DNA from: Lepidodermella squamata
Taxonomy: Eukaryota; Animalia; Gastrotricha
DNA: 64,000 bases
Assembly: GCA_047495785.1 (NCBI GenBank)
Contig: JBLDXI010000006.1
Span: 1 to 64,000 of the forward strand
Direction of reading: 5' to 3'
Shown: one piece after another, positions 35,395 through 61,800 of the stretch
Position numbering within the stretch: position 1 is the stretch's first letter
Layout of the letters: the number at the start of each line of letters is the position of its first letter
Made by a program: the position numbers and the translations under genes
Notes under the pieces: generated by a model
The model's input: only the letters and a program-made list of their open reading frames with translations
What the model was told of the DNA's origin: nothing
The model's database searches: none

Positions 35395-36200
35395 AAAGGC
35401 GCGAGCGAAGCGAGCAACGCATTTTAGCGACCGAAAACCTTGCCCCGCCGTGAAACGCGAGCAAAGCGAGCATCACGGGGCAAGGTTTTCGATCGAGCAA
35501 AGCGAGATGAGTCGAGCGTAGCGAGAAGGCAGTGTGCTATCGAACTTAAATTTTTTCGAGCGCAGCGAGAAAAACTATTCAAAACTGTGATGCGACCGTA
35601 GAACGCCCTATCGTCTTGTTATTTCGGTAGAGCAAAGCTAGATTGATAATGTTTCAAGGTCCTTCACAATGTTTCAACACCTTGCTATCACGAGAAAATC
35701 CTTCTATAGTCATTTCAGTTTCTATTCCAGAATCGCATAGAAAATGCATATTGGAAACCAACAAAATAATTGAAATCCCTGCTTAGATCAGTTTAAAGCG
35801 AATGATTCTCAAACATTCGCTCATTTTTTATGCTTCCGACACCGAAACTGGCTGAGAAACATCGAAAAATTGGGCGTTTAGCGACGCGCAAAGCGATTCA
35901 GAATAACCAGATTGCAAATTTGGAGCTTTTTAGTTTTAAGGTGGATTTTTTATTCTTTCAAAATCGCTCTTCCTATGCGATTTTTCGCATTTTTTAGGGG
36001 TATTTACCCACGTAAAACGAAGAAGGTAACAGCTTCCTCCCGAGTACTATGTAAAATAGAGCCCACGATACGACTAGTTTCTCGGAAAAATCAGATAATA
36101 AGCCTCGGCTTCGCCTCGTCTTATTATGTGAGTTTTTCCTCGAAACTGGCCTCCTCTAGGGCTCTATGTAGAGAGAGCCCTAGAGGAGGCCAGTTTCGAG
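35395..36200. repeat. Repeat-derived segment with GCGAGCGAAGCGAGC-type motifs and a perfect 27-bp-stem hairpin (36139-36200)
   Basis: CTCGAAACTGGCCTCCTCTAGGGCTCT / AGAGCCCTAGAGGAGGCCAGTTTCGAG; larger imperfect palindrome centred on CCTCGGCTTCGCCTCG. Confidence 0.6.
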
Positions 36201-36606
36201 TTAGGCAAAGTTAGTTTTCAAAGTTAGGCTAACCTACCTTGCCAGTGATGCGCCGTGATACGCCGTGTGATCGTGTTGGTCGCCTTGCCGTAGTTCGCTT
36301 TGTTTCATTAGCGATTGTTATAGCAGCTCGGCAACGCTGTAGCCAAGTAGAAAGTATACCACACTGTGTAGATCCCTAATCACCTGTTGCTGCGAAATTA
36401 AAAATCAGTTGAATATTCTGTACACGGCTAGCACGCTGAGATGAGAAAGGAGAGCTTCGTCGATAAACTTAAATTTACAAGATTGATGTATTCGTCTATT
36501 GCAAATAATTTAATAATTGAATCGAAAATAAATATTACGAAGGAGGCAGAGCAAAACATCACAGTTCATTAAATCGTCACCACGTTATCCACCTTTAAGC
36601 CGTTAT

Positions 36607-39600: not shown

Positions 39601-40511
39601 CCAAGCAGCCTGACTCAGCAAGGCGACACGCCGTGTACTGTCTCGTCGTCTTATCAAAGCACCTGATGTGCGGTTTTCGTTGGACAGGAACATTCACTGA
39701 AAGCGAGAAAGTATTAGGCAGAGCCATGTTAAATTTAAAAAAAAATCACCTTTTTCCTCCAAACACGTAGCCATATTAATGAAGTTCCCTTCGTCCTAAT
39801 AAAACAATCCAATAAATTAATTTGTGTCGCCTCGGGAAAACAGCTAACCTCTAGATTTTTAGGGCAGACATCAAACCGGGACGGGACGCATGTGATGATT
39901 TGATAGTTGGAAGTGCATCGTTTGGCTGGCAATTCCTAAAGCAATGGAGATTGAATCAAAAACCATTAGCTAGAAAATTTTACCGAGAATGTTGGAATGT
40001 CGTTCAGGCAATCTTTGAAATTATAGCCCATCAAATCGAAGCCTTGATAATCGAAGAGCTGTGAGCACAGAAATAGAGAATCCTCGCAACGACCGACGAG
40101 CAATTAGGGTCACCTACCTCAATTTCATTTTCTTTGCAAGGATTGTTACCAGATCGGCATTTGAAAGTCAAAGCGGCATACTCGTAGCACAATTTAGCAC
40201 TCTTGATGAATCCAAAATTTACACAAGCGAATCGGAAAATTAGGCAACTCACCCCTAATTTGCAGCCATCTTCGGAGGAGTAAACTCTGGTCCCCTATAT
40301 CAAAATTAAGACTTGAATTTGAATGAGAGTGATGAAATGAAAATTCTACTTTAAACTCGATCAGCTTCTTACAACCCTTCGTAAGGGTCCGACATTGAGT
40401 GAAGGTGTTATTAAATTGCGAATAGCATCGCACAAACTTGTGGCACCAAACATGCTCGAAAGCAAACGTTGCGAATAATAGTAAAAGTGAGGTCAAACAG
40501 CGGCTGTTCAT
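36607..40511 (-). CDS. Cys-module / triple C-type lectin protein, paralogue D (multi-exon)
   Basis: MNSRCLTSLLLLFATFAF signal peptide; about 10 Cys modules and 3 CTLDs; ends CEKMCGAK*. Confidence 0.85.
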
Positions 40512-41159: not shown

Positions 41160-42216
41160 TCTTTTGTCCTACTTTGAAAAATCAGAAATTTATTGTCAAA
41201 TCAAGTTCACAATTTCGTGCAAGCGTAATAGGCCTCAATTATTTCTGGTGGAGTGAGGGCGACATCATAAATCATCAAACACGCGGCCGCATCACCCTCT
41301 CGAAAATTGTCCATGCCCCAGAAAAACCGGCCCATGTGAAAACCCATAGAGAAAAAATGACCAGAGAAAGCACTCAAGCTAAAATTTCTAAATCCTCATT
41401 TTAATTCAAAGTTGACTTTCTCAAAACGGATATCTCCGTTTTCATCCAAATTTTGCATGCCTATAGAACGCGAGTTGCTCTTTCACGTGGTATAAGATTT
41501 GAGGTGGGCAACCCAACCGTTGTTACGATACAAAAACCTCGCTTTCACTATGGTTTTACTTATTTTGATGATATCAAGACTGAGCAGCAATTGCCCACCT
41601 CAAATCTTATACCACGTGAAAGAGCAGCTCGCGTTCTATAGGCATGCAAAATTTGGATGAAAACGGAGATATCCGTTTTGAGAGCGCACTTCTATAATAA
41701 TGGAGATCAATATTTTAGCTTGAGTGCTTACTCTGGTCATTTTTTTCTCTATGTGAAAACCATAGCCGTGATTTGCAGCGGCATTAGCCACAATCTCGTG
41801 AAATCTCGGCTGTCCAATCAGGCCGTATTTTGAATAAACTGAAACGATTGATGTTTCAATTTCAAACGTTACAGCAATAAATTGCCATGGTTCGTCCGAA
41901 GGTAGAACGTGGTTACTCAGGACTTGGTTCAACGCAATCAATCTCACTGTCTTTTGAGCTGCATTGTACGCTATTCGAAACGTATTTGTATCGTGCTTGC
42001 TGATCGAAACCCAAAAATTCCGTAAAATCGATCATCGTCTAAATGGCTTGGTTTCAGAAACAAAGAAACCGTAAACGACTTGGACCTCATAGGCCAAGCG
42101 TCATCAGGCCGGTAGATCAGGCAAGTTGGGGACTTGCCTTTTATGAGGCCAAAATTCGGCTTATCCAAAGGACCGATTCCGAAGCTGGGTGGGCTTTTAT
42201 CATCGGGCTTCTGCGA
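41160..42216 (-). pseudogene. Partial duplicate of the LamG-like 3' exon of the ankyrin gene (about 45740-46370), frameshifted and interrupted by a MITE
   Basis: Near-identical peptides (DDKSPPS.GIGPLDKPNFG..., RLIALNQVLSNHVLP...) split over frames; a further degenerate piece near 40910-40980. Confidence 0.85.
41345..41753. mobile_element. 409-bp foldback MITE, P- or hAT-like, 8-bp TSD
   Basis: CATAGAGAAAAAA.../...TTTTTTCTCTATG with ~165-bp arms; TSD TGAAAACC; the empty site is visible in the paralogue near 45912. Confidence 0.95.
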
Positions 42217-43119: not shown

Positions 43120-45393
43120 ATGTTTTTTCCTATTTCCGTGGCAATCAGTTTGCTTGCGATCTTCGGAAGGTTAACAACGTTCTCGGCGCCGGCTCCCGAT
43201 TTCTTCAACTCGCCCCCAAAAAATGCGACAAAAACTCTCATAATTCCGAATTTGCTCGGTTACCCAATAACAAACGCATGTAACATAACGTCTTATATGT
43301 TAGCCGATCATGTCAACTCGAGGCTTGACTTTTTGCCCAACTATCTTGTCAAATTTGTTCCTGGCAACAGCCGAGCTGCCAATCAACAACTAATCCAGAT
43401 AATGGAACGGACCAGCTATCCAAGCAACACCTACATCGCTCCTATCATTACGGGGCCTGATGCCACCTGTGAAGAGGTAGCTAGAACCCTTCGGGGTATG
43501 CAAACTATTCTCTACTCGCCAACGTGCGGAGGGCCGATTTTAGTCTCACGCCGGCCTGTCGATTTTAACAACATGTTCTCGACGTCCTCCCCGACCGAAC
43601 GCTACATCTACGCCGGGCTGGAGGTAATGAAAAACATTGGAAAATGGAAAGAGGTCGCTATAGTCTATAGCACGCAATCTCGTAATTTTGAGGTCTTAGC
43701 CAGGTCCTATTTCGACCTGTTTGAGGCTAATGGGATCACCGTCAAACAGTTCATCTACTCCTCCAGCACGCTCAACATATCAACGGACGAATGGACGGCT
43801 TTGCGCGATACTGTTCGAATTATAGCTACCGTACTGCCAGGAAATGAAGATTGTCGTAGATTTCTTTGCTTAGCTTGGCAATATGGCATCAGACCTCCAC
43901 GCTACGCTTTCATTTTATGGAACACGCCCTGCCTGACTAGTTCCATTGACCCAACAACACCGCCCGTCTTTTCGTGGTGTGACCAGGCCATTTTCGATAA
44001 ACAGCTTGAAGGTTCCTTCTCCATAGGTATTTCGGTTAATAGCAGCACCGCGCCAACTTCTTTCGGATACTACGGGCCTGATCTTGATGCTGAACTGGTG
44101 CGAAGGGTGAACAATAAAACCTACGAAGACTATTTCCAGCGCTACGTTTGCCACGACGCTTTGATGGCGACTTTAATAACGCTTGACGAGGCTGAGAAAA
44201 CTTTGAACGCAAACTATTCGCTGACATTGAGCGATTTTGCCGATCCGCGTTACCGCAAACTGGTAAACGTTGTAGTTAACGCAACGGCTGGCTGGGTTGA
44301 TTATTCCGGTCTCCGAACTGGTAGGACTAAGAAAGACACCAACGGCTATGGAAATGAAAATATGTTGATTCTTCAAGCTCAAGGCCGGTTCCAGAGACTT
44401 GTAGTCGAGATTCAATATTTCAGCAAAATGGCGCCAAAAGTCTACGAAGCTAAATATTGGAACACTCCCTATTGGCCGGCGGGAAAGCCTGCCAAAGATC
44501 TTACTCACATAGAAGCTCGGCTACAATACTGCGGCGCTCGAATTTATGGCCCAGCAATAGGTCTAGCCTTAGTCATTTCAATTTCTCAAATTGTCCTTTA
44601 CACGAAATCTAGTAACAGAGAAGTATTTTTCGGAAATTTGAAAAAAATGGTGGTCCTCCTAAGTTGTTTGATTCTGAACGCTTCAGCTGTTTTCTTCGTC
44701 GCTGGTCGCGACTTTGCGATGGAAATCGAGTGCAAACTAATGCCACTTTTGACTGTCATTAGCCTTTCGCCCCTAAATGGACTCATGTTCTCGCAAATGA
44801 TAGCTTACAGCAAGCTAATCAAACTTAAAATAGCAAAATCAGATGTCAAATCTGATCAAAATCCTCTCCGTGCTAAAAAAATTGTTCTCCTCGAAAGTGA
44901 TCCTGTCAAAACTTCAAAAATAATTTCCATGATATGGCTTAGTTCTGTTCTACCCAGCTTGGTCACCCTTGTCGTTTGGCTGCTCTTGGATCCCCCGAAA
45001 TTGTTCTTCAAAAAAGGTCCACTGTTGTTCGATGAAATAGCCGATACCTATTATACAAACGATTTGATCAATTGCAAATCTCCCGATTTTTCTCTCGTTT
45101 GGTTAGTCATCCTGTTGGTTCTACATTTTCTTCAACTGTTGCTAGCGAACTTCTTCTCGCTCGGCATCAATCGACGAAAAATGCCGGCCAACTTGACTTT
45201 TTTGATGAACATGTTCCGCCTGGCGGCTGTTTTCGCCCTAACCTTCGCAGCTGGCAGTGTTTTAGCTGTGATCGTGGTGTCACACGTGCAGACGCCTTGC
45301 ATTGAAAAGGCCATGGTTGCATTTTGCGAACTTATCTATTCGGCTGTAATTGCCCTGGTTCTGTTTTTCCCTGCCAAACAAGGCAGAAACTAA
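43120..45393 (+). CDS. Intronless class C GPCR, GABA-B-receptor-like (Venus flytrap domain + 7TM)
   Basis: Signal peptide; IITGP..CEEVA, FNNMFSTS, KWKEVAIVYS, HDALMA; YWPAGKPAKD linker; seven hydrophobic segments; no Cys-rich domain. Confidence 0.8.
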   Translation: MFFPISVAISLLAIFGRLTTFSAPAPDFFNSPPKNATKTLIIPNLLGYPITNACNITSYMLADHVNSRLDFLPNYLVKFVPGNSRAANQQLIQIMERTSYPSNTYIAPIITGPDATCEEVARTLRGMQTILYSPTCGGPILVSRRPVDFNNMFSTSSPTERYIYAGLEVMKNIGKWKEVAIVYSTQSRNFEVLARSYFDLFEANGITVKQFIYSSSTLNISTDEWTALRDTVRIIATVLPGNEDCRRFLCLAWQYGIRPPRYAFILWNTPCLTSSIDPTTPPVFSWCDQAIFDKQLEGSFSIGISVNSSTAPTSFGYYGPDLDAELVRRVNNKTYEDYFQRYVCHDALMATLITLDEAEKTLNANYSLTLSDFADPRYRKLVNVVVNATAGWVDYSGLRTGRTKKDTNGYGNENMLILQAQGRFQRLVVEIQYFSKMAPKVYEAKYWNTPYWPAGKPAKDLTHIEARLQYCGARIYGPAIGLALVISISQIVLYTKSSNREVFFGNLKKMVVLLSCLILNASAVFFVAGRDFAMEIECKLMPLLTVISLSPLNGLMFSQMIAYSKLIKLKIAKSDVKSDQNPLRAKKIVLLESDPVKTSKIISMIWLSSVLPSLVTLVVWLLLDPPKLFFKKGPLLFDEIADTYYTNDLINCKSPDFSLVWLVILLVLHFLQLLLANFFSLGINRRKMPANLTFLMNMFRLAAVFALTFAAGSVLAVIVVSHVQTPCIEKAMVAFCELIYSAVIALVLFFPAKQGRN

Positions 45394-45781: not shown

Positions 45782-48700
45782 TCACAATTTCGTGCAAGCG
45801 TAATATGCCTCAATTATTTCCGGTGGCGTGAGGGCAACGTCATAAATCATCAAACACGCGGCCGCATCACCCTCTCGAAAATTGTCCATGCCCCAGAAAA
45901 ACCGGCCCATGTGAAAACCATAGCCGTGGTTGGTCGCAGCATTAGCCACAATCTCGTGAAATCTCGGCTGTCCAATCAGGCCGTATTTCGAATAAACTGA
46001 AACGACTGATGTTTCAATTTCAAACGTTACAGCAATAAATTGCCATGGTTCGTCCGTTGGTAGAACGTGGTTACTCAGGACTTGGTTCAACGCAATCAAT
46101 CTCACTGTCTTTTGAGCTGCATTGTACGCTATTCGAAACGTATTTGTATCGTGCTTGCTGATGTAAGCTCGGAAGCCGAAAATTCCGTAAAATCGATCAT
46201 CGTCCAAGTGGCTTGGTTTCAGAAACAAAGAAACCGTGAACGACCTGGACCTCATAGGCCAAGCGTCATCAGGCCGGTAGATCAGGCAAGTTGGGGACTT
46301 GCCCTTTATGAGGCCGAAATTCGGCTTATCCAGCGGCCCAATCCCCAAGCTGGGCGGGCTCTTATCATCACAGCTGAAAGCATCCCGGCCATTACCGGAG
46401 ATATCGAAAGTTCTCAGGGTTAAATCAATGTTGTTCATCGGGTAAAAGGCAACCAAATTGCTGACCCTAGGCCATCGCGATACCGGAATCTCCAGTGTAG
46501 TCGGAATGTTCAACGCCATCGCCGTACAACATTGAGTTGTAGATGTTCCACTTGGCGCGCTTTTGAATCTAGCGAAATGCACTGGCTTGGGATTGATTTC
46601 GAGTGACATCGCAGCATTTGCCATTACAGTGCGTAAAGCTGACCTGCGAGTAGACGTCCTTGCTATTCGTTCCGACGATTCGATGCCAAACCATGAAATT
46701 CGCGTAGCTGTAGTCCACTTAGCAGTCGTTTTCGCTGTTGTTCGTGATTTTGTAACTGGTGCTGATTGAGAAGACGAATCGCCATCAACTTCATGGAACC
46801 CTTGAAAAGTTTCAGTCGGAATCGGTTTTGTCGTTTCAGTAGAAGTAGTAGCTGTAGTGGTCGTAGAGGTCGTAGTGGTACTAGTCGTTATTGTAGTTGT
46901 GGCTGTGGCAGTTAGCGTTGTTTTCGCTGAGGTAGATGTTGGCACTGTTGAAGTCGACGTCGTCCTTTTGCTACTTGTCAGCTTTGTTTTTGAGCAATAT
47001 CCATCAATGGTCCACTCGCCTTCCATGGTACACGTGATCAGACCGGGCCCTACAATATGATAACCACTTTTGCATCGAATCAACCCAGTCGCACCCAAGC
47101 AGCGGCTCGAAATCCTGAAATATCCGTTCGCAATCATAACCATCTCCATTTTCGGGCAAAACAAAACTATCAAGGAAGAATTTAAGTTTTTTTTCCGAAA
47201 TTTTCTGAATTGCACACTCACGCTTTGTCGTATTGTTGTAGTCGTCAAGCGAATTTCCACATAAATCTGGTTTATCGATCGCACATTTGCCCGACTTAAG
47301 AAGAGCAGCGTAAATTGCATGCCGCCCGTTCAATTTCGACCTTTGAAGTGGTAACAGGCCATCGGAATCGTACTTGTTACAATCGACCCCGTATCGCGTT
47401 AGCAGAAGATCGAGAATTCGCACATCGCGATCTATTGCCAAACTCAACAGTGACTTGCCAGTATCATCTTCGTGATTCAGCACTTGTTGCAAGGTGGGTT
47501 TAGTCAACTTAGCTAACATCTCATCTAAAACCTGGACGTCAACCATTGGAAGGGCAGCGTGAAATGGTGTTCGACTATGAACGTCCAAATCTAGCGCATG
47601 AGACTGATTTTTCACGAGAAGAAGTTGTGCCAATTTCCAGTTTTGATTAAAAACAGCTAGATGTAAAACACTGCCACTGGAGGACTTGGACGCGGCTCCG
47701 TTCTTATCGGCATCTAAAATAGCTGCAATAACATCGAAATTTCCGAGTTGGATCGCGTATTCTAAGCAGGTTCGTCCTAGATTGTCCTTCAGCGCAAAGT
47801 CCAAATGATTGCCGAATTTTCGGATAAATTCCGCATTAGTCGCATCAACAGCGATGTGAACTAAACTTTGACCATCGCTATTCTTCAACAAAGGATTAGC
47901 TCGAGCTGTATGGATGAGGTATGAGATGAAACGGGGAGATTTCTTCTCAAGAACAGCGACCATCAGAGGGGTAACACCTTGTATTATCGTTTTGGCATCA
48001 ACATCGTTGAAAATCTTGTTCTTCGACGTTAACAAGTGGTTGAATGTTGAGCCATCTCTTGCTAGATGTAACGCGGTATAGCCCCTTTGCTCAACAGCCG
48101 ATACGTTCGCACTAAATTGTTCACTCAATGTATCAGCTAAGCCTCGAGCATTATTCGAAATGGCGAGTAGAAAAGCTGTGAAGCCTCGATTATCAGCTAT
48201 ATCTATAACATGATCACCTGGACCTGTAACAAACTAGCGATGAATCACTCTGACATAGGTACTATGTAAAGGCTCACCTGATAGAATTTCAATCAGCTCA
48301 TGATCAGTTTTCCTTCTTTCCAACGAATCCTGGCCAAACATATCAGCTCCTCTTGCTAAGGCATGAATCGGAGTCCCTCCGCTGTTATCTCTAACATCAA
48401 CTGCAATGCCCGCTTCGATGAAGTATCTAGCAAAAGTCGGATTCCTCAAATTCGTCGCAAGATGTAGTGGAGTTCCTCGAATCGATCGATCCTGATCATT
48501 CGGGTAGACGCAAGTCGCCTCCCCGAAACCATGATCGGGCGCAGGCAGCATTTCCAAAGCTGTTACGATAAAATCTTTCGAATTCCCGGCAACAGCGTAA
48601 CAAGCCGGGGTTTGACCGGACGCGTCTTGGGAACTTGAGTTGAAAAAGTACCAAAAATCGTTGAGGAAATCTGCAAAATTGTGCTCAGCCGCTAGGTGGC

Positions 48701-49385: not shown

Positions 49386-49600
49386 ACGACAAACAAATAA
49401 ACAGTCGCCGCATTTTCGCTAACAAAAAGCTAACAAAAATGATGCTTTATTTAAGATTTGATGGCTTATTGATAAGCAGTGTGGTGATAAACAGTCTATA
49501 CTATACGAAATGAAGTGCAAGCATAAACATGCGCGGCCTGCTAAAAAACAAGTTCGCATCACATTTCCCAAAAATTTAAAATGTACATCCATTTTAGATT

Positions 49601-52600
49601 TTAATAATTAGCTGCAATGATGTATTCCAGTTCTTGAAACGATGGGCGGTCACTCGGTGATTCCAACCAGCATTTTGTCATCACATTCTCGTAGAAAGGC
49701 TCGGGACATTTCCGCGGTTTTTCCAGCACCTTACCAGTCGTTATTCGAACTACCACTGAGGAAGTATCCAATCCTTCATACGGGATCGATTTGCACTCTA
49801 CACGCAATACATTTATTGGAGAAATATAGAGACAGTTAAGTGTTACCTGAAAACACTTCCCATATTGTCACGCCGAAACACCAAACATCGCTTTTCGGGC
49901 CGAATTTCATCTGCTCGATAGCTTCAGGAGGGTACCATCGGATCGGTATCAGCAATTGACCACCACTGTTTTGCAGCTTGTAGTAAACATTATCGGTGTC
50001 GAGGATGCGCGACATTCCGAAATCGCTTATTTTCAAGACGAAATCTTCTGAGACCAGGACGTTCCTGCAAGCAAGGTCTCGGTGGAGGCAGTTTTTCGAC
50101 GAAAGGTAGGCCATGCCACGGCAGATCTGGAGGCAGTAGTCGATAAGCCCCGCTTCAGTCCGGTCATCGTCTGTTTTCTTCAGAAATTGATCCAGGCTGC
50201 CTTTTGCCATGAACGGAGCGACAATGCATGGTTGGCCGTTAATAGCAGCTACTCCAATTAACGGCAAAACATTATGATGAGAGAAATCTTTCATTATAAG
50301 AGCTTCTTTCATGAAATCGGTCAACTTTGTTACAGACCCTGGCTTGACACTCTTGATTGCGATCATCATGCTCGTATTATCGGTGTCTTTGAGGCTGGCT
50401 CGATGAACGGAGCCGAACTGGCCCTCACCAACGTAATCGTGCAATTCGATCCTTCCTGGTTGAATGTTGATCGGTTTGAACAGCTCAATGAGTTCATCTG
50501 CTTGCGGCAAGTCCTTCAAAAGACTGGATAGGTCGGCGATAGCTTCGATATAGTTCGATTCTTTGACGGAATGGTGGTCTAGCGGCATAGTTATTAGCCG
50601 TTTAATCAACTTTTTGGATCTTCTTTTGTGCCAAACCACTCCAATGACAATGAGAATTGCGATAATTGCCAAGACACCAAGAATAATGGCGATCAGAATG
50701 GCTGTTATTGTAAATTTTACTACTACCGATATTTTAGCCTGAGTCTAACCTGTAAAGCTCTGCTTATACGACATAGGTGTTGTTGTGCTTGGTTCTTGCA
50801 GCAGCTCTTCCTTAACTGTCGGAACTGTTGTCACTTCAAGGTCATCCTTTAAGTCCTTTATTTCCTCAATCTGATATAAATTATAGGGACAGGACTGATT
50901 CGCTGGAACAGTAAGACATCCGGCAGTTTGTTTGATTTTTTCACTCAGCGGAAAAATGTTCCTAAACTTGATAGGAAGTCCCTTCTCGCAAGATTGGTTG
51001 AGCTCTCCCAGGAAAATGCCAGCCTTGAACAAAGAGAAGTATACAGTTATAGACGAATTTTTAATGCATACCATAACGAATCTTTTGCTGAGCTGGGTTA
51101 CATAATCCCTTTCAATGAAGAGCAACAAAGTGGCACCGAGCCGCAAATCGCAGGCAGTAATTCTGTCAACCTTCGCTTTGAAGCACAGTACTTCTTCTGC
51201 TGATAGCTGCGAATTATCGGCACTTTTGGAGCAGTTAGATTGCGGTAACAACTTCCCAGTAACATAACGACTTTGACTATTTACACCTACGACATAAGCC
51301 TCATCATTCCATAGGACGTTCTTGTCGCAACAAGATGGCAGGCAAATGCTTCCTGGATTATCGGTGTCGTAAGTCCTCTTGTAACGAGCTACTTTGATAC
51401 CGTAATCTGTTGTCAGCGATGAATTTGCCATATCTATGCATGAAGAAGCGGTTATAATCACATTCTCGGCCAACCAAGCGCCTATGCAGTGCGATGTTAA
51501 GTAGTAGTCTATGAATGGAAAATATTTTCTGATACTGAAGTCTTCTTCATCTTCATCTTCATCATCTTCATCTTCATCATCTTCATCTTCATCATCTTCA
51601 TCTTCATCATCTTCATCTTCATCATCTTCATCTTCATCATCATCTTCATCTTCAAGAAGGTAAGGATGGATATAGCCGCATGTTGATTGATCTATGATGT
51701 ATCGCATTGCATCTTGAACGGCAAACAAGTCTTCCGATGCTAATTTAGCGTCATATATTGACAATCCAGCGATCGCATGACGCTTCGCTGTTGAGTTGAG
51801 AAGAACTCCGTCGGATGAGCCCACTGTGAATCCTGACGACTGAGGCCACCATATATGCGCCAATCCGTTTTTTGGCGGCATTTCAAGCGCGAAAACGAGG
51901 GTAAAATCGTTGAAAACTGTTAGCCAAATGGAATTCGGTTCTGCAGAAAACACAATGCCAATGAAAGTCCATTCCGATACAGGGAATATTCCAGGTGCCG
52001 CAATGATGCAAACACCAGGAAATTCAAAAACTAGCACGTCGGGGTACCTGTACCCTATGCTGACCGAATTCGGTTGGAAACCTAGAATCCTGATATCTTC
52101 CGGGTAATTTCGATCAGGCCGGAAGAAAAACGTTACAGTGAAGCCAGAGTTAGATCGAAGTGGAATCTTGAAATCGTTCACTTCGAAATCGAGATTTTCG
52201 CCACTGATCAACATACCCGCATATTGGAAAAGTTCGGAGCCAGATATGAATTTCTGATAAAGCGATTGAGTTAACAGACGACGAGGGCCGAAGTCATAAG
52301 CACCATGAAACCAAGACAGTGGCCAGAGGCCCACCAATGAGAAAGATCTTGGCATTGTGATTCCTGAGATTGTAGACATATCTATGAGGCGAGGATTAGG
52401 CTGGGATAAAACGCACGTTGACTTGCCGATAAGACAACGATACTATCATTTGATATTAAATCACTCAGCTCCTCTAGAACAGCCTCCTCGCTGAGATTAC
52501 CATTGAAAGGGTACGCTCGTTGGATGTCGCCAGCGAATGTCACGATCACACTGTTGCCAGCGCGCTTTTCCACTCTCGAAATGAACGAATCAGGCGGGCC

Positions 52601-55600
52601 ATATGAGATGCGTTTTAAATGTTGATTCAGCTAAAATTGGTATAAGCATATACTTGCTGTCGATTAAATGGCTCATAGAGGAATAATTAATAGAGGAGTA
52701 GTCACACAAATGACTACTGAGTAATCGGGAAAGTACTTGGTCCTTGACGCGAAATCGTTCATATCTTACACTCTCTATGATCTTATTCCAATTAGTCATA
52801 GTCAGAAGCTCGTTACTTTGATCGTCTAGGTATTGCGCAATGTCGCGTAAAGTCATAGTTCCAATGATTCTCGCTGAGGTAAATAACAAGCAATCGATCA
52901 TTAATCGAATAAAACCAATCCTGAAACATACCCGTTTGGCCCGCCATAAATGCTTCGTTCAAGCGTCGACAGCTGTCAATAATTGAGGCCAATTGATTTT
53001 CGTTGAGGGATACATTATAGGAAGCCAAGCAAGAATATCCCATAGTTACAGCATTATCGGTTCCCTCTGGTTCCTGAAAAAGAGAGTTAAATATCTGCGA
53101 TTGAATATTAAATTTTCTGGTTTTTATTACCAACGCTTTTCGCATAAAAGTACTATGCGCGGCCTTACGCTGCTGTTTTTGCTGTACATAGCCACACATA
53201 CTCCGTGCCTATCACGTTTTTTGGTCACTGCTGTCGAATCACCTTGATTCGTCGATATTTTCTAATTCCATATTTTTCGGCAATGCCAGCGCCATCGGTG
53301 GCGCTTTTTTCCGACGGTCTCTGCCTGGCGTAAGCCCTGTGGCTTATTCCGGTTCCTCTCTGGCGGTGCGAGCCTGCCCGACTTGGGGCGGGCTGCCTTT
53401 CGCTCTGAAGCTGCCGCACACTGGCCTGCTCTGGTGGCTAAGCGGCCGTTGCCTGCCGACCTATTCACGTTTCATGTTGGCCCCGTTTGACCCGGCGCGG
53501 GTCGGTGCTGTTCGGGAGCCGGTGCCGGCCCGCGACCTGGATGAGGCGGGCGGCGGATGGCTGGCTGTCGGTGTGGTGTCGGTTTGGCGGTGGCGGATGG
53601 GCGGCGGGTGGCTTGCCGCATTTCGGCGACCCGTGCGCAGCTGTCTGGCGGCGGATGGCTGGCCGCATCTCGGCGCCTCGACTCGGCCGGCGTTGGCGGC
53701 CATGGACGCTTAGATATTTTTGTACATAATTTTTGTGATCACTTGTTTACTCTGTTATTGATTGCTAACTCGATGCGAAGCCGCCCATGTTTAGCCTGCG
53801 GGCTGATGGGCTGGGAATGTAACGAACCTAGAATAATAAACCACACATTTCTCTCTCTCTGAGGTTACTGTCGTTTTCGATTCCGGTGCTGTTCGTTAGA
53901 ACGCGCACTTCTGATTATTCTCAAACAATTTTTTGCTGCTGTTATTATCGATACGCCAACTTCGTCAGATATTTCAACAACAAAGCTGCTTCAACAACAA
54001 GCTGCCCGTCATCAATTTACTACGACTACGAGCACGTGGTAATCCCATTCATCGATTCAAGCACGTGGCATGGCTACACCACGAATTTCTTCTTCTGCTT
54101 CTTTGGCGACAAGATGACTAAGATGGTCGAACTACGCGGCAAACAAGCTATGTTCGAACTCAACGACTACGATCTTGCTGAAAATTGCGTGAAAAACGGC
54201 CTGATTTGCAAGCCGTTCATGTTACGATTCCGATGGTTTATTGTCAAGCAATCTGATGTTGTTCAATGTTTCAACTGCCAGCGATATGGCCACCTGGCTC
54301 GAAACTGCTCTGATGAGACGAGATGCTTACGATGTGGTCGCAAACACGACGTGAAGACTTGCTTGCGGGGTGTTCGTTGCTGCAATTGTGGTGGCGAGCA
54401 CACCGCGAACTCGAGGGATTGCCCTCTGCGCCGGCCTTCGGCTGGCTGAAACGAAAGTTTCATGGGAAATTGCTATGCAATTTCAAGACGGGTCGGGGGG
54501 TAACTGGGATTTCTAACGAAATCCTAGTTGCTCATCCACTCTAAATTTGGGAAAATTTTTAAGGACGGGATAGTTTTGGTCCCAAGGGGCGGGTTCTGGG
54601 TCTAAGTGGTGACGGCGGGTGGTTAAGTTGGTCCCACTTTGGCTACATGATGAATCCGCTGCCAGGTCCGTCTGTGATCTTCCATCACAAGTGACGCTGT
54701 AGGGGCAAATTTGATAGCCCGATCGGCGCGGCTCTGAGCCAAATTCCCCAGTAAGTTTGGGGGGGGGGGGGGGGGGGGTTTCTGAGGTTACTGTCGATAC
54801 GAACTTCGGTGCGGTTCTATTAGAACGCGCACTTTTGCTATTTTTCGAAAAACAATTTTTCGCTGTTTATTCTCACTGTTTGGCTACATCGCTGGATATT
54901 TCGCTCAATCAATTCGATTACGTCAACATCTACGTCAACATCGATCGACTATCTGCGAGCACGTGGCAACTCTACTATCAATGAATGGCGTCTGGAGGAA
55001 AAAACTCGATGGCGTCTTCACCACAACATATTAACTCATACCCGAACGCTAGCAAGCTGTTTACAGCTATTCCATCGACCCATCAAGGCCTGTTCTCCAA
55101 TATGGATAGACTAACGCGGAGTGCTATCTACAGTATCGTCGAAAGTATCTACATGAATCAGGGCAGTCTGAGTGGCATGGATCTCTTGATTCTCATGCTC
55201 AAGGAAATGGACCTTCGAGGGAGAATCTTTTCCTTCAACGACCGCGATTACGACGACGACAAGCCAGAAACTAACGAATTGGGTACGCAAACCTGCCAAG
55301 ATCGTGCGAACAACACAACGCAGACGATCCTAGAAAATCGGCCCAAGCAAGTGGCGCCGAAGAAGAAGTCTTTTGAAAAGATTATTGTCAAGACCGAACC
55401 GAACTGCGATCGAAAACAACTGTGGTCCAGGATAGTGGCGGCGGCACCGGAGGCTGGTTTCAAGGGCTGCAAGCAGACTTCAGATTCTCTGGAGATACGT
55501 CTCGATTCGAGCGTTCAATCTGCCCAGCTCAGCACTAAACTGGAATCTCTCGGGGCCAAAGTCATGCTGCAAAGACCGACCAAATACCGAATAGTTCTAA

Positions 55601-58513
55601 CAAACTTCGATGCGAATGCCGTCTCGGCGAGCCACATTACGGCTGTCTTTGGCGACAAACTGGCGAAGACGGTTACCCTTCGGGGTGGCCAACTGATGTT
55701 CGAGCTTACTGATTTCGATCTGGCGGAGCGAGCGGTGAAAACTGGTCTAACTGCCAAGCCGTTTCTACTCCGATTCCGATGGTTCGTTGTGAAACCACCT
55801 GATGTGATCCAATGCTACCGCTGCCAACGTTACGGCCACATGGCGCGGAGCTGTTCCGAAGAAGAAAGATGCCTACGATGTGGTCGACCTCACAATGTGA
55901 CGATGTGTGTGCGTGCTGTGAGCTGCTGCAATTGCGGTGGCAAACATGCCGCAAACTCGAGGGAATGCCCTCTGCGCCTGCCTCCGGCGGGCTGAAACAA
56001 CATGCATGTGGGAAATGGTGATTTCGCAAGAAATTGCCATTTCAAGACGGGTCGAGTGGTAACTAGGATTTCTGGGAAATCCTAGTTGCCACTGCTCAAA
56101 ATTGGGGAAAATTCTTAAGAACGGGATAGTTTGGGATTCCAACACGGTGGGGTGGTCCTGGGTGTGGGTGGAGACGGCGGGTGGTTAAGAGGGTCCCACT
56201 TGGCACACATGATGACCCCGCCGGTCCGCACGTGATCTTCAGTCACAGTGACGCTGTAGGGGCGACCTTGATTTGCCCGACCGGCGCGGCTACTGAGCCA
56301 AATGCCCCAGTAGGTTTGGGGGGGGGGGGGGGGGGGGGGGGGGGGAGTTAAGTAATCAAAACTACTGAACAACGAAGACCTCAGCAGCTGAATTTCGAGT
56401 TCTCAATGCTCTTCATCGGGGAAAATAGAAATACTTTACTGCTCCTAGCTCGCATTATCAAGAATTTGACATCCCCTGATCCAAGAGACATGTCGCCAGC
56501 CGCCAGCTGTCAATCAATTTAGCTATTATTTTGGTTAGATATGTTGCATTGAAAGTTGACCGCCATGTAAAGTGCACTTTCAGCATAAGCGCTGCGTTGA
56601 AAGTACACTCTAAACATTGATAGTGCACTTTATAGAGGTTTATTACACTTTGATAGAATAGAAAATTACACTTTGATTTTCTTGCTTGGTTTCCAAATTA
56701 AAAAAAAACTGATTAAAATAACTGAAAATGACGTAGGGAACATTCGGTTTGCTCATTGAAATCATGAGACGTAGCTAGGACGCCGCAGCTGGGTTGTTTA
56801 CGAGAAAAAAGTGTTGGCAGAGATAATTAGGGTCAAAGGTCACTTTTTGAAAATACTGAGATGAATCACCTCATTAAATTTTCGCGCTCTTTTCATCCTT
56901 TTTTTATGTTTCCCATAAAAGATCCCTTGATTCAGGCGCAATCAATCGATATTCAAGCAACACAATCTAAAAAGTGAAATCAACATTAGTTTCGAGCCAT
57001 TAATTTTCGAAATCGATTAATCATGGATGAAACTAAAATCAATGGATGTAATGAAGAAGCTTGCTTTCCAAATTTACTAGAGGGAGTCATTGAAAAAAAT
57101 TCCTAAACATTAAACATTGTTTATCTCAAGTAGTTAGAGCATACACGGAGAATGCTTGTTGTAAATCATGCTGAAAAAGGAGAAAAAACTGAGATTTGAA
57201 AAATCTGACAAAATGAGATGCTGATCAGATCCAGCACATATCTCGATTTTTCATTCCAGTTTCAACCGCCAGTAATTTGGCCGAAAATGAGCAATCAAGT
57301 TCCCGGTGAAAGTCCCATAGCCGAAAGCGTTGAAAATTTCGACTGAAAAACATTTCCTGCTGCATTGTTTAAGAGATGAACTTATCTTGCGTCATTACGC
57401 AACAGATGCAGCATAATCGCGAAGTGAAATAAAACAAATCAATGGAGTAATTCATGCAGCTTGTTTGAGTTGCTTTTTGTCTCAAGAAATTAGTTTGCTA
57501 AGCTCTACATCTCATTGTTCAAGTCTCTCGATCTCTGAGTTCCGACTTGGAACCTGATTCTAGCTTTGTAACCATCGACGCCTACGATTTTTAAAACCTT
57601 TTGAAATTTCAACTTAATATTTTTTAAATTTCAGGGATTAATAAAATAATTATTTTTATTAAACCCTGAACATTTAATTTTTCCAAAAGGGAAATTATCC
57701 AGAATATTCAAGCATGCATAACGACAACACGTCAGTTAGTATGGCGGGATTCAAGCTTCGGCGTCCTAGCTACGTCTCATGATTGAAATATATCTTAATC
57801 GGCTATGGGAAGAAATTGCCTTATACGATACGACATTTAATTACTGTATGAGTTCATACTTTGGTCGAGTAACCTATGGTGAGTTGGTTGAGTGCTGCCT
57901 GCCAAGGTTTCAATCTCTGCGTGTCAAGCGATGCTATCAGTTCAATTTTATAACCTGGCTCAGTGCCTAAATATACGGCAAAGTGCGACTTGTTGTGGCT
58001 GACAATCGCCAGGAAGTGCCATTTACTCGGTTGCCACACGTTCTCCACTTTGGTCGAAACTATTGCACGGCCGTCTGTCGCGCCGATTTCCACACTGAAA
58101 TTACCGAATCGCAATCTTACGTAAAATGAATTGCCGAGGGAGTTTTGTGAATCAATCTCTGTCAACTCGACAATCCCTCTCGGTTGCTTGCCAGTTGTTT
58201 GATATGGGAAGAAAAACAGCGTAAATGCTTGCTGGCGGTTTTCAGAGGAGCGATACTTCAAGAGATACGTCGAAAATTCAAGAAAATAAAAAGTGTAGTC
58301 AGCCCATGATGAGTAGGCGCTATCAAGGTAGCCGAATGGACCTGCTTGTTGCATTACGCATGCCGATTCCGCGTGGCGGGCTTTGATGACAGCTATTGGC
58401 AGATAAGCAATGTTTTCCGTGCCATATTGACGATTATACGGCACCAAGAGATGGGGCGATCCGAAGCAATACACATTTTCGATGATTGTTAGAAATAGCA
58501 CGGGGAGTCGCAT
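49601..58513 (-). CDS. Receptor tyrosine kinase copy 1 (apparently intact): signal - LamG-like - SEA-like - LamG-like - acidic tract - inactive trypsin-like domain - TM - Met/Ron-like kinase; large intron 53074-57859
   Basis: [42 protein letters not shown]; TM followed by HKRR; exon order mirrored by copy 2. Confidence 0.82.
51539..51653 (-). repeat. Coding 15-bp minisatellite giving a (DEDED)n acidic tract
   Basis: Tandem TCATCTTCATCTTCA units in frame; absent from copy 2. Confidence 0.9.
53200..53859 (+). mobile_element. Probable 5'-truncated LINE 3' end (CR1/L2-group-like); left boundary approximate
   Basis: GC-rich frame with SSLAVRACPTWGGLP, resembling the SF..R....WN.LP ORF2 C-terminal motif; 3' hairpin, AATAAA and a (TC)n tail. 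Confidence 0.45.
53858..54778 (+). mobile_element. Gag-only element, unit 1 (internally deleted), structured 3' region and G20 tail
   Basis: Starts TCTGAGGTTACTGTCG like unit 2; three CCHC knuckles in ORF 53886-54449; G-run 54759-54778. Confidence 0.75.
54779..56345 (+). mobile_element. Gag-only element, unit 2, structured 3' region and G28 tail
   Basis: Same 5' and 3' ends as unit 1; complete ORF; G-run 56318-56345; no RT follows. Confidence 0.78.
54985..55995 (+). CDS. Non-LTR ORF1/Gag-like nucleic-acid-binding protein with three zinc knuckles
   Basis: CYRCQRYGHMARSC, CLRCGRPHNVTMC, CCNCGGKHAANSREC (Jockey/I/R1-group ORF1 spacing). Confidence 0.88.
   Translation: MASGGKNSMASSPQHINSYPNASKLFTAIPSTHQGLFSNMDRLTRSAIYSIVESIYMNQGSLSGMDLLILMLKEMDLRGRIFSFNDRDYDDDKPETNELGTQTCQDRANNTTQTILENRPKQVAPKKKSFEKIIVKTEPNCDRKQLWSRIVAAAPEAGFKGCKQTSDSLEIRLDSSVQSAQLSTKLESLGAKVMLQRPTKYRIVLTNFDANAVSASHITAVFGDKLAKTVTLRGGQLMFELTDFDLAERAVKTGLTAKPFLLRFRWFVVKPPDVIQCYRCQRYGHMARSCSEEERCLRCGRPHNVTMCVRAVSCCNCGGKHAANSRECPLRLPPAG
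56763..57781. mobile_element. Non-autonomous P-like DNA transposon
   Basis: TIR CATGAGACGTAGCTAGGACGCCG and its exact reverse complement; 8-bp TSD ATTGAAAT. Confidence 0.93.
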
Positions 58514-58886
58514 TTTCGCTTTAAAAGTTCACGCAATATAGGCCTAATATAGGGATAAATAGACAATTTTACCAAAAGTAAGCCGCAGATCATTTATCAG
58601 GCACAAAAATGAAGTCATAGATTAGGTTTCTGTGAATTCATCTTATAGCGCAAGCATAAACATGTCCATCTTGCTAACGACAAGTTCACACAGGGAGCGA
58701 AGTAGGGTAGCAGATTTGGAAAGGATAAGGAAATCGTCGGAAGGGTCACCACTTTGGTGCTTGTCTGTGTAACGAGAGTGAATTAGTAGAGATGACCCCT
58801 GCCATACCTTGAAGTACTTCGCTCTCCCTTCACTCACATCATCTATACCAAGGTACATATTTCAGCTGTCAATAATGTTTTAATTT

Positions 58887-61800
58887 TTAAAGATAGGCTT
58901 CAATAAATTCTTCCAGTTCCAGAAATGATGGTCGGTCACTCGCTGTCTCCAACCAGCATTTTGTCATCACACTCTCGTAGAATGGCTCGGGACATTTCAA
59001 GGGTTTTTCCAGCACCTTACCAGTCGTAATTCGAACTACCACTGAGGAAGTATCCAGTCCTTCATAAGGGATCGATTTGCACTCTATCACGCGAAATAGT
59101 TATTGGAGTAACATGGAAAGAATATTTATTAAATGTCACCTGAAAATACTTCCCACATCGTAACTCCGAAACACCAAACATCGCTTTTCGGGCCGAACTT
59201 CATCTGCTCGATAGCTTCAGGAGGGTACCAGCGAATCGGTATCACCACCGCTGTTTTGCAACTTGTAGTAAACATTATCCGGGTCGAGGATGCGCGACAT
59301 TCCGAAATCGCTGATTTTCAAGACGAAATCGTCTGAGACTAGAACATTCCTGCAAGCGAGGTCTCGGTGGAGGCAGTTTTTCGACGAAAGGTAGGCCATG
59401 CCACGGCAGATCTGGAGGCAGTAGTCGATAAGCCCCGCTTCAGTCCGGTCATCGTCTGTTTTCTTCAGAAATTGATCCAGGCTGCCTTTTGCCATGAACG
59501 GAGCGACAATGCATGGTTGGCCGTTAATAGCAGCTACTCCAATCAGAGGCAGAACATTATGATGGGAGAAATCTTTCATTATAAGGGCTTCCCTTAGAAA
59601 ATCAGTCATTTTGGATACAGACCCTGGTTTGACACTTTTGATTGCGATCATAATTTCGCTGTTGCTATCAAAACCTTTAAGACTGGCTCGATGAACGGAA
59701 CCGAACTGGCCCTCCCAGACGTAATCGTGCAGTTCGATCCTCCCTGGTTGAATGTTGATCGGTTGGAACTGTTCAATTAGTTCATCAGCCTGTGGCAAGT
59801 CCTTCAGAAGGCTGGATAGATCGGCGATTGCTTCTATGTAGTTTGAAGCATTTGCAGGATTGGAATTCAATGTCATGCCGACGAACCGTTTTACGAAAGC
59901 TTTAGACCTCCACCTGTAGAAAATAACCGCCGCTACGACCAGTATAGCGATTACGGCGACGACACTCAAAATGATCGCGACAAGCGCAACTACTCGGAGA
60001 AACAATAATAACCTATGACAAAGCAAAAAAGTTTTACAAACCTGTGTAATCCTGTTGACCCAAACTTGGCGTTGTGGCTCCAGATTCCACCAGAGACTTT
60101 GATTTGATTTGATTTGATTGTGATTTTATTTGATTTAGGCCATTTTTTGATGATTTGATTTATTGATGATTTGATTTAGAAAATTTCAGGATGATTTGAT
60201 TTGATTTAAATTTAGCCCTCTTGATTTACTGCTGATTTATAAAAATCAGAACTCTCGGAATTTCCCTGTTACTAAACATGAGAAATTATATTTGCCTTGA
60301 AAACAACTGTTTTCCAAAGCCTGGAGCTATTCATCCCCTTTCATACTCATTCAACCAAAGCCAAGCTTGAAATTTGAAAGAACCCCCAGAAATTTACCAT
60401 GATACTCATGTTTCCCTATGCGAAAGATTTGATTTGATTTGATTTAAACGAGCCTGATGATTTGATTTGATTGATTTACTATCGATTTTTTGGGGATTTG
60501 ATTTGAAATGATTGATTTACTGAATAAATCAAATCAAATCAAATCAAAGTCACTGGATTCCACCACTTTTTCTTCAGTTACTCCGCTCGTTACTCCACCA
60601 GTGATCGTCTCAGTTTCATTTGCCCACTCGTAGATGTAAGGACACGGCTGATTTGCCGGAACACTCATGCAACCAGCAGTTGTTTTGATCCTCTCGCTCA
60701 TCGGAAGGATGTTTCGAAATTTTATGGGAACTCCCGTTTCGCAAGTTTGATTGACATCTTCAAGAAATATCCCAGCCTGATCATAAAATAAAATTAGACG
60801 TAATACCTTATCACTATTTCTTTAATTTCCTTTACCAAAACGTATCTTTTTCCAAGCTGTGTTATATTGTCGCTATCGATCGTCAACAGCAAAGCGGAAC
60901 CAGGAAGCAAATCGCAAGGTGAGATGTTCTTATACTTGGTTTGAAAGCACAGCGCCGATGCTTCTGTTTTCAGCGACTCTTTGATCGTTTCCAAACAGTT
61001 TGATTGTGGTATCAATGTACCAGAAATGTAGCCATAATTTGCTTTACGCCCACGTAGCCCGACGATATAAGCAGGATCGTTCCACAGAATGTTTTCGTGG
61101 CAGCAAGTCGGTAAGCAAATGCTATTCGAGTCCTTGAACGGTTTACCAAACCGGGATATGGCGATAGAGTCGAATGTTTCATAGGCCTGCGAAGAATTGA
61201 GCGTTTTTTCGCAAGAGGAACTTGTTACCAAAATTCTATCAGACAGCAAAATTCCTATGCAATTCTCGGCTGTATAAACTATGAAAGGGAACTGATCGTT
61301 TTTCGCATCGGTTGGCTTTGTTACAGGCGAAGCTAAAGGTTTCGTGGTTAGGGATATGCCGCAACTTTTTCGAGATATAAAGTAACGCATTGCATCTTGA
61401 ACAGAGAGCAAATCTTGCCAAGTCAACCTGCCGCCATAAATCGACAATGCTGCTATTGCATGATGCACCATTGTCCAGTTTGAGGAAAATCCGTAAGATG
61501 AGCCAACAGTAAACCCGGACGATTGAGACCACCACTTTTCCGCTGGAGAATCACTTGGGGGTCGTTCTGCGGCAAAAACTAATGTGAAATTGTTGAAAAC
61601 TGTCAGCCACGGTTCATTTGGCGCTGCGGAGAACACAATGCCAACAAAGGTCCATTCCGCTATAGGAAAAATCCCAGGTACCGTGATGACTACGTCGGGT
61701 AATTTGAGAACAGTGCATCAGGATGCTGATATCCGAAGCTGATCGAATTCGGGTGAAATTCAAGGATACCAATTTGTTCTGAGAAAAATTCATTGCGTTG

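What the first reader, a model, noticed from the sequence alone, without database searches (positions are those of the whole stretch)
53858..56345. Head-to-tail gag-only elements that end in poly(G) instead of poly(A)
Seen: two clearly diverged units share a precise 5' end (TCTGAGGTTACTGTCG plus a hairpin), a three-knuckle ORF1, no reverse transcriptase, and the same 3' end GAGCCAAAT.CCCCAGTA.GTTT followed by G20 or G28. Unit 2 starts right after unit 1's G-run, and unit 1 right after a (TC)n tail. Established: gag-only non-autonomous LINE derivatives exist (Drosophila HeT-A, HAL1), but with A-rich tails. Inference: a possibly undescribed non-autonomous retroelement family mobilised in trans, with a G-tail (G-quadruplex-capable) and a preference for inserting next to retroelement ends. 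I could not find a TSD.
Basis: partly seen in the sequence, partly recalled or inferred. Interest (0 to 1): 0.8.

Follow-up and report, generated by a model that had tools for sequence, protein, structure and literature searches.

The report
Gag-only retroelements ending in G-runs
Two diverged copies of a small mobile element that encodes only an RNA-binding gag-like protein lie head to tail here; each ends in a folded RNA module and a run of 20-28 G instead of the usual poly(A), and related elements in other datasets end the same way.

Summary
Unit 1 (53858-54778) and unit 2 (54781-56345) share the same 5' end, a 5' hairpin, a three-knuckle ORF1 and the same 3' end, followed by G20 and G28. 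These are the only long G-runs in 64 kb.

The units are not in-situ duplicates. Their shared coding part has dN/dS 0.17 with dS about 1.3, yet the 3'UTR is 85% identical. They therefore come from two old, selected lineages.

There is no room for a reverse transcriptase. Relatives in independent datasets are gag-only as well. One (L005) has the same 97-nt, four-hairpin 3' module and ends in G7 followed by unrelated flank. Another (L002) has the module up to its contig end. A more distant one (L006) ends in AATAAA plus A13. So the G-run is a heritable terminus, not a sequencing artefact and not the middle of a LINE.

My best reading is a non-autonomous, ORF1-only non-LTR retroelement lineage that is copied in trans through a structured 3' module with an oligo(G) tail.

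Not supported or still open:
- The upstream "(TC)n retroelement tail" is not supported.
- An insertion preference rests on a single junction.
- I found no TSD, no RT partner and no host species.

I rate it a new variant of a known kind, of moderate to high interest.

The parts
53850..53859 (+). (TC)5 at the 5' junction of unit 1. The last TC overlaps the element's first two bases. It could be flank, 5' extra nucleotides or an expanded 5' end.
   Evidence: Read directly from the sequence. Unit 2 has TT+TCTGAGG and unit 1 has TT+(TC)4+TCTGAGG.
53858..54778 (+). Unit 1: an internally deleted ('mini') copy, 921 bp, made of 5'UTR, the last 111 gag codons, the 3'UTR and G20.
53885..53909 (+). 5' hairpin of unit 1.
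54114..54449 (+). Residual ORF of unit 1 (111 aa, three CCHC knuckles, open). An upstream ATG at 54070 is in another frame.
   Evidence: 68% aa identity to unit 2; dN/dS 0.17.
54671..54766 (+). Conserved 97-nt 3' module of unit 1, with four hairpins. The last hairpin pairs CCCCA with the first U/G residues of the tail.
   Evidence: (111 bits).
54759..54778 (+). G20 tail of unit 1.
54779..54780 (+). TT between the tail of unit 1 and the TCTGAGG of unit 2.
54781..56345 (+). Unit 2: a full-length gag-only element, 1565 bp.
54808..54833 (+). 5' hairpin of unit 2.
54985..55995 (+). ORF1 of unit 2 (336 aa). It has a low-confidence helical N-terminus, two RRM-like domains (residues about 130-267, nt 55372-55785) and three CCHC knuckles (residues 277-328, nt 55813-55968).
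   Evidence: best PDB fold matches are tandem-RRM proteins such as Sxl, HuD and U2AF65.
55996..56317 (+). 3'UTR of unit 2, structured (z = -4.2) and 85% identical to that of unit 1.
56229..56325 (+). Conserved 97-nt 3' module of unit 2.
   Evidence: (106.5 bits).
56318..56345 (+). G28 tail of unit 2, followed by unrelated sequence (AGTTAAG...).

Best explanation
These are two members of a lineage of ORF1-only (gag-only), non-autonomous non-LTR retrotransposons.

Anatomy. Each element has a ~205-nt 5'UTR with a fixed 5' end and a hairpin. It encodes an ORF1 protein with two RRM-like domains and three CCHC knuckles. A ~320-nt structured 3'UTR follows, whose last ~97 nt form four hairpins. The element ends in a genomically encoded oligo(G) run.

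Inferred mechanism:
- The RNA is bound by its own gag.
- It is reverse-transcribed in trans by the ORF2 protein of an unidentified LINE. That protein would recognise the 3' hairpin module, in the 'stringent' way that SINE/LINE pairs and the R2 or SART1 3'UTRs work.
- Reverse transcription starts inside the G-run.
- The G-run is carried as template. Its length drifts (7, 20, 28) by polymerase or RT slippage, as with the (TAA)n of the I factor.

Head-to-tail pair. The most economical explanation is that unit 2 was primed on or next to the G/C tract that unit 1's tail provided. This is comparable to Alu landing in older A-tails and Dong landing in (TAA)n, and it would hide any TSD inside the G-run. 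Alternatively, the RT jumped from the 5' end of unit 2 RNA onto the 3' end of a unit 1 RNA within a single event.

Shown: the anatomy, the absence of RT, purifying selection on gag and both UTRs, and conservation of the 3' module plus G-run across datasets.
Inferred: trans-mobilisation, the priming mode, and how the tandem pair arose.
For: - The ends, hairpins and G-runs are exact and non-random.
- dN/dS is 0.17 over 111 shared codons with dS 1.33. The 5'UTR is 79% and the 3'UTR 85% identical, far above the ~38% identity at synonymous sites. Both UTRs are therefore under selection, as expected for cis-acting transposition signals. It also means the units entered the locus as already diverged lineages.
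- The ORF1 fold is two RRM-like domains plus three knuckles, which is the LINE ORF1 architecture.
- An HMMER search of 1.84 billion representatives finds only six close relatives (P0005, P0006, P0001, P0007, P0009, P0010). All are on unannotated short contigs.
- Every relative that can be read past the gag stop shows a UTR and no ORF2.
- L005 carries the 3' module (89.7 bits) and then G7 and unrelated flank. L002 carries the module (36.5 bits) up to the end of its contig.
- The module is 96.8% paired in 4 sequences, with 4 compensatory pairs. Slid controls give 30-56% paired.
- Decayed copies exist (L005, L006 and L010 are frameshifted), and L006 has AATAAA plus a genomic A13. These are typical retroposon traits.
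Against: - No reverse-transcriptase partner with the same 3' module was found. None is in the window, and the source genome was not available.
- No TSD was found, and no empty site is available from the paralogous gene copy.
- Only three G-tailed termini were seen (G20, G28, G7), so variable length and 5' truncation across many copies remain untested.
- Within the window alone, an old tandem duplication would also produce shared 'precise ends'.
- Covariation rests on 4 sequences.
- The library type of the Logan runs (DNA or RNA) is unknown.
Confidence: 0.7

Rival explanations
1. This is a host (domesticated) gag-like gene that was tandemly duplicated long ago. On this view the shared ends are simply the borders of the duplicated segment, and the 3' module plus G-run is a conserved mRNA 3'UTR feature.
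For: dN/dS of 0.17 would also fit a host gene. Only one locus is visible in the window. A tandem duplication gives head-to-tail copies with identical borders. No TSD was found.
Against: Unit 1 has lost two thirds of the ORF, yet its UTRs stay 79-85% identical while synonymous sites are saturated. A decaying paralogue would not behave this way. Relatives are frameshifted, patchy and absent from annotated proteomes. One relative carries a genomic A13 after AATAAA. The protein has LINE ORF1 architecture. In L005 homology stops exactly at the G-run.
Confidence: 0.1
2. A single retrotransposition event produced both units. The RT copied unit 2 RNA to its 5' end, then jumped to the 3' G-tail of a unit 1 RNA. 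The result is a chimeric cDNA, and no insertion preference is involved.
For: Unit 2 is full length to the shared 5' end, and only TT lies between it and G20. The units belong to different lineages. End-to-end template jumping by non-LTR RTs (R2) and chimeric L1 retrocopies are established from the literature, cited here from my own knowledge.
Against: There is only one case, with no TSD to bracket the pair. This rival is a sub-variant of the main explanation rather than a replacement for it.
Confidence: 0.2
3. The units are 5' halves of an ordinary LINE, with ORF2 lying beyond the G-run. Or the G-runs are sequencing or assembly artefacts, such as two-colour chemistry poly-G.
For: Homopolymer G is a known artefact of two-colour Illumina reads. 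The exact lengths 20 and 28 could be imprecise.
Against: G20 is followed by the 5' end of unit 2, and G28 by unrelated AT-rich DNA and a MITE-like element. No RT domain lies nearby. The G-run sits at the same homologous position after the conserved hairpin in two diverged units and in an independent JGI contig, where it is internal to the contig. The first G residues are part of a conserved stem.
Confidence: 0.03

Closest known systems
HeT-A and other ORF1-only telomeric Jockey-clade elements of Drosophila
   Same: They are gag-only, depend on another element's RT, have a three-CCHC gag and lie in head-to-tail arrangement. The best annotated match of the knuckle region is a D. virilis gag (XP_070067183; 40% over 77 aa). 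It lies in a contig-end array of three 6.3-kb gag-only units. ORF2 loss is reported as frequent in telomeric but not in non-telomeric Jockey elements (bioRxiv 10.1101/2025.06.09.658640).
   Different: The element here is 1.6 kb, not 6 kb. Pfam detects no PRE_C2HC domain. The similarity is confined to the knuckles. The tail is oligo(G), not poly(A). The 3'UTR is short and structured. The location is between genes in a gene-rich stretch, with no array beyond two units.
Non-autonomous retroposons that share a structured 3' end with a 'stringent' partner LINE (SINE/LINE pairs; the R2 and SART1 3'UTR recognition; R2-derived SIDE elements, PMC3414825)
   Same: A conserved 3' hairpin module sits at the very end and is more conserved than the coding sequence. 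There is no RT of its own.
   Different: This element keeps a selected gag ORF, and its partner is unknown. Sharing of the 3' end with a LINE has not been shown.
LINEs with non-poly(A) repeat tails, and microsatellite-targeting R1-clade elements: I factor (TAA)n, Dong at (TAA)n, Kibi at (TC)n, Mino at (AC)n (PMC3812793)
   Same: The tail is a simple repeat of variable length rather than a post-transcriptional poly(A). The downstream unit sits directly on the same repeat (the G-run) that forms its own tail.
   Different: The tail here is a G homopolymer. I found no report of one, though Repbase and Dfam were not searchable. Unit 1 has no G-tract on its 5' side, and L005 has none beyond its tail, so strict G-tract targeting is not met.
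HAL1 (half-L1) of mammals
   Same: It is an ORF1-only derivative of a LINE that amplified in trans.
   Different: HAL1 has an L1-type ORF1 (coiled coil, RRM, CTD; no knuckles) and an A-rich tail. It belongs to an unrelated clade.

Membership tests
Non-LTR retrotransposon (LINE-type) derivative | ORF1 protein of the RRM plus CCHC-knuckle type | tested here: met
   Three knuckles. The AF2 model shows two beta-alpha-beta-beta-alpha-beta domains at residues 130-267 (pLDDT 70-85). The best PDB fold matches are tandem RRM proteins.
Non-LTR retrotransposon (LINE-type) derivative | ORF2 with endonuclease and reverse transcriptase | tested here: not met
   The 3'UTRs of 309 and 322 nt hold no ORF. Relatives also lack ORF2. 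The element is therefore non-autonomous, not a LINE proper.
Non-LTR retrotransposon (LINE-type) derivative | Target-site duplications, and 5'-truncated copies sharing one 3' end | tested here: inconclusive
   No TSD was found. Only two copies are in the window, and the genome is not available. L005 shares the 3' end, but its 5' side is cut by the contig end.
Non-LTR retrotransposon (LINE-type) derivative | Dispersed, multi-copy, with decayed copies | tested here: inconclusive
   Frameshifted relatives occur in three other datasets. Copy number in the source genome is unknown.
HeT-A-type telomeric gag-only elements | Gag-only with three CCHC knuckles | tested here: met
HeT-A-type telomeric gag-only elements | Jockey-clade telomeric gag with a PRE_C2HC/MHR region | tested here: not met
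   Pfam at E up to 10 reports only zf-CCHC for the window ORF1. PRE_C2HC is found in the D. virilis gag.
HeT-A-type telomeric gag-only elements | Long head-to-tail arrays at chromosome ends, with poly(A) junctions | tested here: not met
   There are two units only, flanked by kinase genes. The junction is G20+TT, and no telomeric repeats are present. The chromosomal position of the window is unknown.
Stringent-type non-autonomous partner of a LINE | 3' end homologous to that of an RT-encoding LINE in the same genome | not testable with these tools
   The covariance model R1 finds only the two units in the window. Scans of the metagenome, viral and prokaryote-genome collections gave only chance or knuckle-only hits.
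Microsatellite-targeting R1-clade-like elements | The same simple repeat on both sides of the insertion | tested here: not met
   Unit 2 has G-runs on both sides. Unit 1 has none on its 5' side, and L005 has none after its tail.

The most novel reading that the evidence does not exclude
This is an old lineage of ORF1-only retroelements, spread across species, whose priming signal is a terminal hairpin plus an oligo(G) tail. It preferentially primes on G/C tracts, including the tails of its own kin. It therefore builds head-to-tail arrays away from telomeres, as a non-telomeric counterpart or possible precursor state of HeT-A-type arrays. Hints in this direction are the circular 1396-bp contig L010 and the TAGGTTAGG reading of the terminal hairpin in L005.
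Probability: 0.15. Interest if true: 0.8.

Novelty: new variant of a known kind. Interest (0 to 1): 0.6.

Why it matters
[quoted passage not shown] A selected gag-only lineage outside that setting would broaden the picture of how retroelements parasitise each other.

Its terminus is a conserved hairpin module plus oligo(G) rather than poly(A). That gives a clean system for asking how an RT chooses its template and where it starts. It also allows a test of whether a G-quadruplex-capable tail has a role in priming, RNA stability or targeting.

On the practical side, such elements would create long G/C homopolymers that disturb assembly and sequencing. TE annotation pipelines that expect an RT or an A-tail would miss them.

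Tried and rejected
Host species:
- The exact-protein look-ups of window ORFs returned nothing.
- Two word-based protein searches with host ORFs also returned nothing: the 757-aa ANF-receptor-like ORF and the TBP-like ORF.
- The species stays unknown. Gene content and the relatives of the gag point to an arthropod, probably an insect.

More copies:
- The DNA pattern of the 3' module in metagenome contigs gave three GC-rich bacterial chance matches.
- The stricter pattern in viral contigs gave none.
- Protein-pattern scans of viral contigs and genome contigs gave nothing or knuckle-only hits in contaminated MAGs.
- L011 and L014 are only knuckle-level relatives.

Other checks:
- Rfam gave no family for the UTRs.
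- TSD search found none.
- The paralogous kinase gene copy could not serve as an empty site, because its upstream region shows no similarity.
- The 5' ends do not align convincingly across species.
- Literature searches for G-tailed non-LTR elements and for mosquito ORF1-only families found nothing relevant.

Considered and rejected:
- Telomeric location: the window is gene-rich and has no TTAGG arrays.
- Pol III-type element: there is no tRNA or 7SL head and no T-run terminator.
- G-run as a 5' extension of the downstream unit: G28 and G7 have no element after them.

Full report
**What is there**

- Unit 1 spans 53858-54778 and unit 2 spans 54781-56345.
- Both begin with TCTGAGGTTACTGTCG. This motif has exactly two matches in 64 kb.
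- Both have a hairpin at +28 to +52.
- Both end with GAGCCAAATNCCCCAGTANGTTT followed by G20 (54759-54778) or G28 (56318-56345).
- These are the only G or C runs of 12 or more in the window, where 0.01 would be expected by chance.
- Two T separate G20 from unit 2.
- The '(TC)n' before unit 1 is (TC)5, and it overlaps the element's own first TC.

**Coding content**

Unit 2 has one ORF (54985-55995, 336 aa) with three CCHC knuckles. Pfam reports only zf-CCHC. An AlphaFold model built on eight family sequences has low overall confidence (mean pLDDT 58). It nevertheless gives two beta-alpha-beta-beta-alpha-beta domains at residues 130-267 with pLDDT 70-85. Foldseek matches these to tandem-RRM proteins such as Sxl, HuD, U2AF65 and UP1. 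RRM-like domains followed by knuckles is the ORF1 architecture of many insect LINE clades (from my own knowledge: Khazina and Weichenrieder 2009).

Unit 1 has lost about 640 nt of the N-terminal coding region. It keeps an open 111-codon C-terminal part (54114-54449). An upstream ATG at 54070 is in another frame. The 3'UTRs are 309 and 322 nt long and hold no ORF, so there is no room for a reverse transcriptase.

**The units are not a local duplication**

Over the 111 shared codons, dN is 0.22, dS is 1.33 and dN/dS is 0.17. The 5'UTR is 79% identical, the 3'UTR 85% and the CDS 74%. Synonymous sites are close to saturation while the UTRs are strongly conserved. The divergence therefore accumulated in lineages in which gag and both UTRs were under selection. 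A truncated local paralogue would not retain this pattern. Both 3'UTRs fold better than shuffled controls (z = -4.2 and -3.1).

**Relatives elsewhere**

The word-based search found four proteins. The exhaustive HMMER search of 1.84 billion representatives found 6658 knuckle-level hits but only six close relatives. None of the six carries a name, and each is known from a single short contig. Their contigs show the following.
- L002 (Logan SRR27977616) has a 463-aa gag and about 400 nt of UTR. The contig then ends inside the same terminal motif, GTGACGCTGCAGGG...CGGCGCGGCTTACT.
- L005 (JGI 3300015615) has a frameshifted gag C-terminus and a 340-nt UTR. It ends ...GAGCCAAATACCCTAATAGGTTA, then G7, then unrelated sequence.
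- L001 and L003 have gag followed by UTR, with no ORF2 before the contig ends.
- L006 is a more distant gag-only relative with an AT-rich UTR. It has AATAAA and an A13 that is internal to the contig.
- L010 is a degraded copy on a circular 1396-bp contig.

A covariance model of the last 97 nt scores 111, 106.5, 89.7 and 36.5 bits on unit 1, unit 2, L005 and L002, and matches nothing else in the window. The model has four hairpins. Across the four sequences, 96.8% of cells are paired and four pairs show compensatory changes. Controls with slid partners give 30-56% pairing. The last hairpin uses the first G residues of the tail. In L005 the stem is re-drawn as CCCUAA/UUAGGG.

This has three consequences:
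- Gag-only organisation is a family trait.
- The structured module plus a terminal G-run is shared by the window units and L005.
- The G-run is neither a sequencing artefact nor an internal landmark of a longer LINE.

**Context**

The window is gene-rich and looks arthropod-like. It contains ankyrin-kinase paralogues, a TBP-like ORF, a repeated gene family and a chromodomain Gypsy integrase. It is not a telomeric array, and it has no TTAGG repeats.

The pair lies about 650 bp upstream of the start codon (53199, minus strand) of one kinase paralogue. The GC-rich 500 bp upstream of unit 1 show no retroelement signal. Downstream of G28 lies unrelated sequence and a segment of about 1 kb bounded by 31-nt inverted repeats.

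I found no TSD. The paralogous gene copy gives no empty site.

**Mechanism**

Shown:
- a selected gag;
- selected 5' and 3' cis regions;
- no RT;
- a fixed 3' boundary at an oligo(G) of variable length (7, 20, 28).

Inferred:
- An unidentified LINE ORF2 protein copies the RNA in trans after recognising the 3' hairpin module.
- cDNA synthesis starts within the G-run.
- The G-run is templated and changes length by slippage.

The 3' region has no AATAAA, so the template is probably a read-through or internally processed transcript. This too is an inference.

For the head-to-tail pair I consider two routes:
1. Unit 2 was primed on the G/C tract of unit 1's tail. This would hide a G-only TSD, and it parallels Alu insertions in older A-tails and Dong in (TAA)n (PMC3812793).
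2. The RT jumped templates between two RNAs within one event.

One junction cannot separate these routes, and it cannot establish an insertion preference.

**Comparison with known systems**

The closest named protein is a D. virilis gag (XP_070067183). It lies in a contig-end array of three 6.3-kb units, each with a single PRE_C2HC plus three-knuckle ORF and no RT. That is a HeT-A-type array. The similarity is 40% over 77 aa and confined to the knuckles.

The element works like HeT-A in that it is gag-only and dependent on another element's RT. It fails the tests for membership of that family: no PRE_C2HC, no telomeric array and no poly(A).

It also resembles stringent-type non-autonomous elements, but the defining shared 3' end with a LINE could not be tested. 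It resembles repeat-tailed LINEs, but a G homopolymer tail did not turn up in the searchable literature. Repbase and Dfam could not be consulted, so 'undescribed' remains provisional.

**Verdict**

I classify the finding as a new variant of a known kind: a gag-only, non-autonomous non-LTR retroelement lineage with a conserved 3' hairpin module and an oligo(G) terminus. My confidence in that core statement is about 0.7. The main rival, an old tandem duplication of a domesticated gag-like host gene, gets about 0.1. The artefact and half-LINE readings are essentially excluded. Interest is 0.6.

- No contig looked human.
- Broken gag copies (L005, L006, L010, unit 1) were only described.
The consensus lines printed automatically by the alignment tools were not used.

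Noticed in passing
window 56760-57784: A segment of about 1 kb is bounded by 31-nt inverted repeats (96.8% match). It looks like a MITE-like DNA-transposon remnant and lies about 400 bp downstream of unit 2.
   Followed up: partly
window 21600-40500 (e.g. 30852-31151 and 32252-32551): An array of a repeated gene family has a period of about 7.7 kb. Inside it is a 1400-bp duplication that is 100% identical, which is either very recent or an assembly artefact.
   Followed up: no
window 49592-50558 and 58878-59846; also 41751-42204 and 45909-46369: The ankyrin-repeat/protein-kinase gene is present as two paralogues (87% identical over the kinase exon). The gag-only pair lies between them, about 650 bp upstream of the start codon of one copy. 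A second short duplication of 93-96% identity lies nearby.
   Followed up: partly
L010 1-1426 (Logan ERR15232722): The contig has identical 30-nt ends, so it is circular with a period of 1396 bp. It holds a degraded gag of this family. This suggests a tandem array or a circular DNA form in that organism.
   Followed up: partly
L004 1-23067 (Drosophila virilis QMEO02000124.1, contig end): Three head-to-tail units of 6.3 kb each carry one 773-907-aa PRE_C2HC plus three-knuckle gag ORF and no other ORF of 200 aa or more. This is a HeT-A-type array, annotated in RefSeq as one spliced 'uncharacterized protein' (XP_070067183).
   Followed up: partly
L005 873-886; window 54753-54762 and 56312-56321: In L005 the loop and 3' strand of the terminal hairpin read TAGGTTAGG, nearly two units of the arthropod telomere repeat TTAGG, just before the G-run. 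The window units read TAAGTTTGG and TAGGTTTGG at the same place. This may be coincidence.
   Followed up: partly
window 262-1473 (-) and 1911-2690 (-): A chromodomain-bearing Gypsy-type integrase ORF lies next to a divergent TBP-domain ORF. The TBP-like ORF had no relative at E<=1e-10 in the word-based search of 5.8 billion proteins, and the 757-aa ANF-receptor-like ORF (43120-45393) had none at E<=1e-20. The host lineage therefore seems poorly represented in public proteomes.
   Followed up: partly
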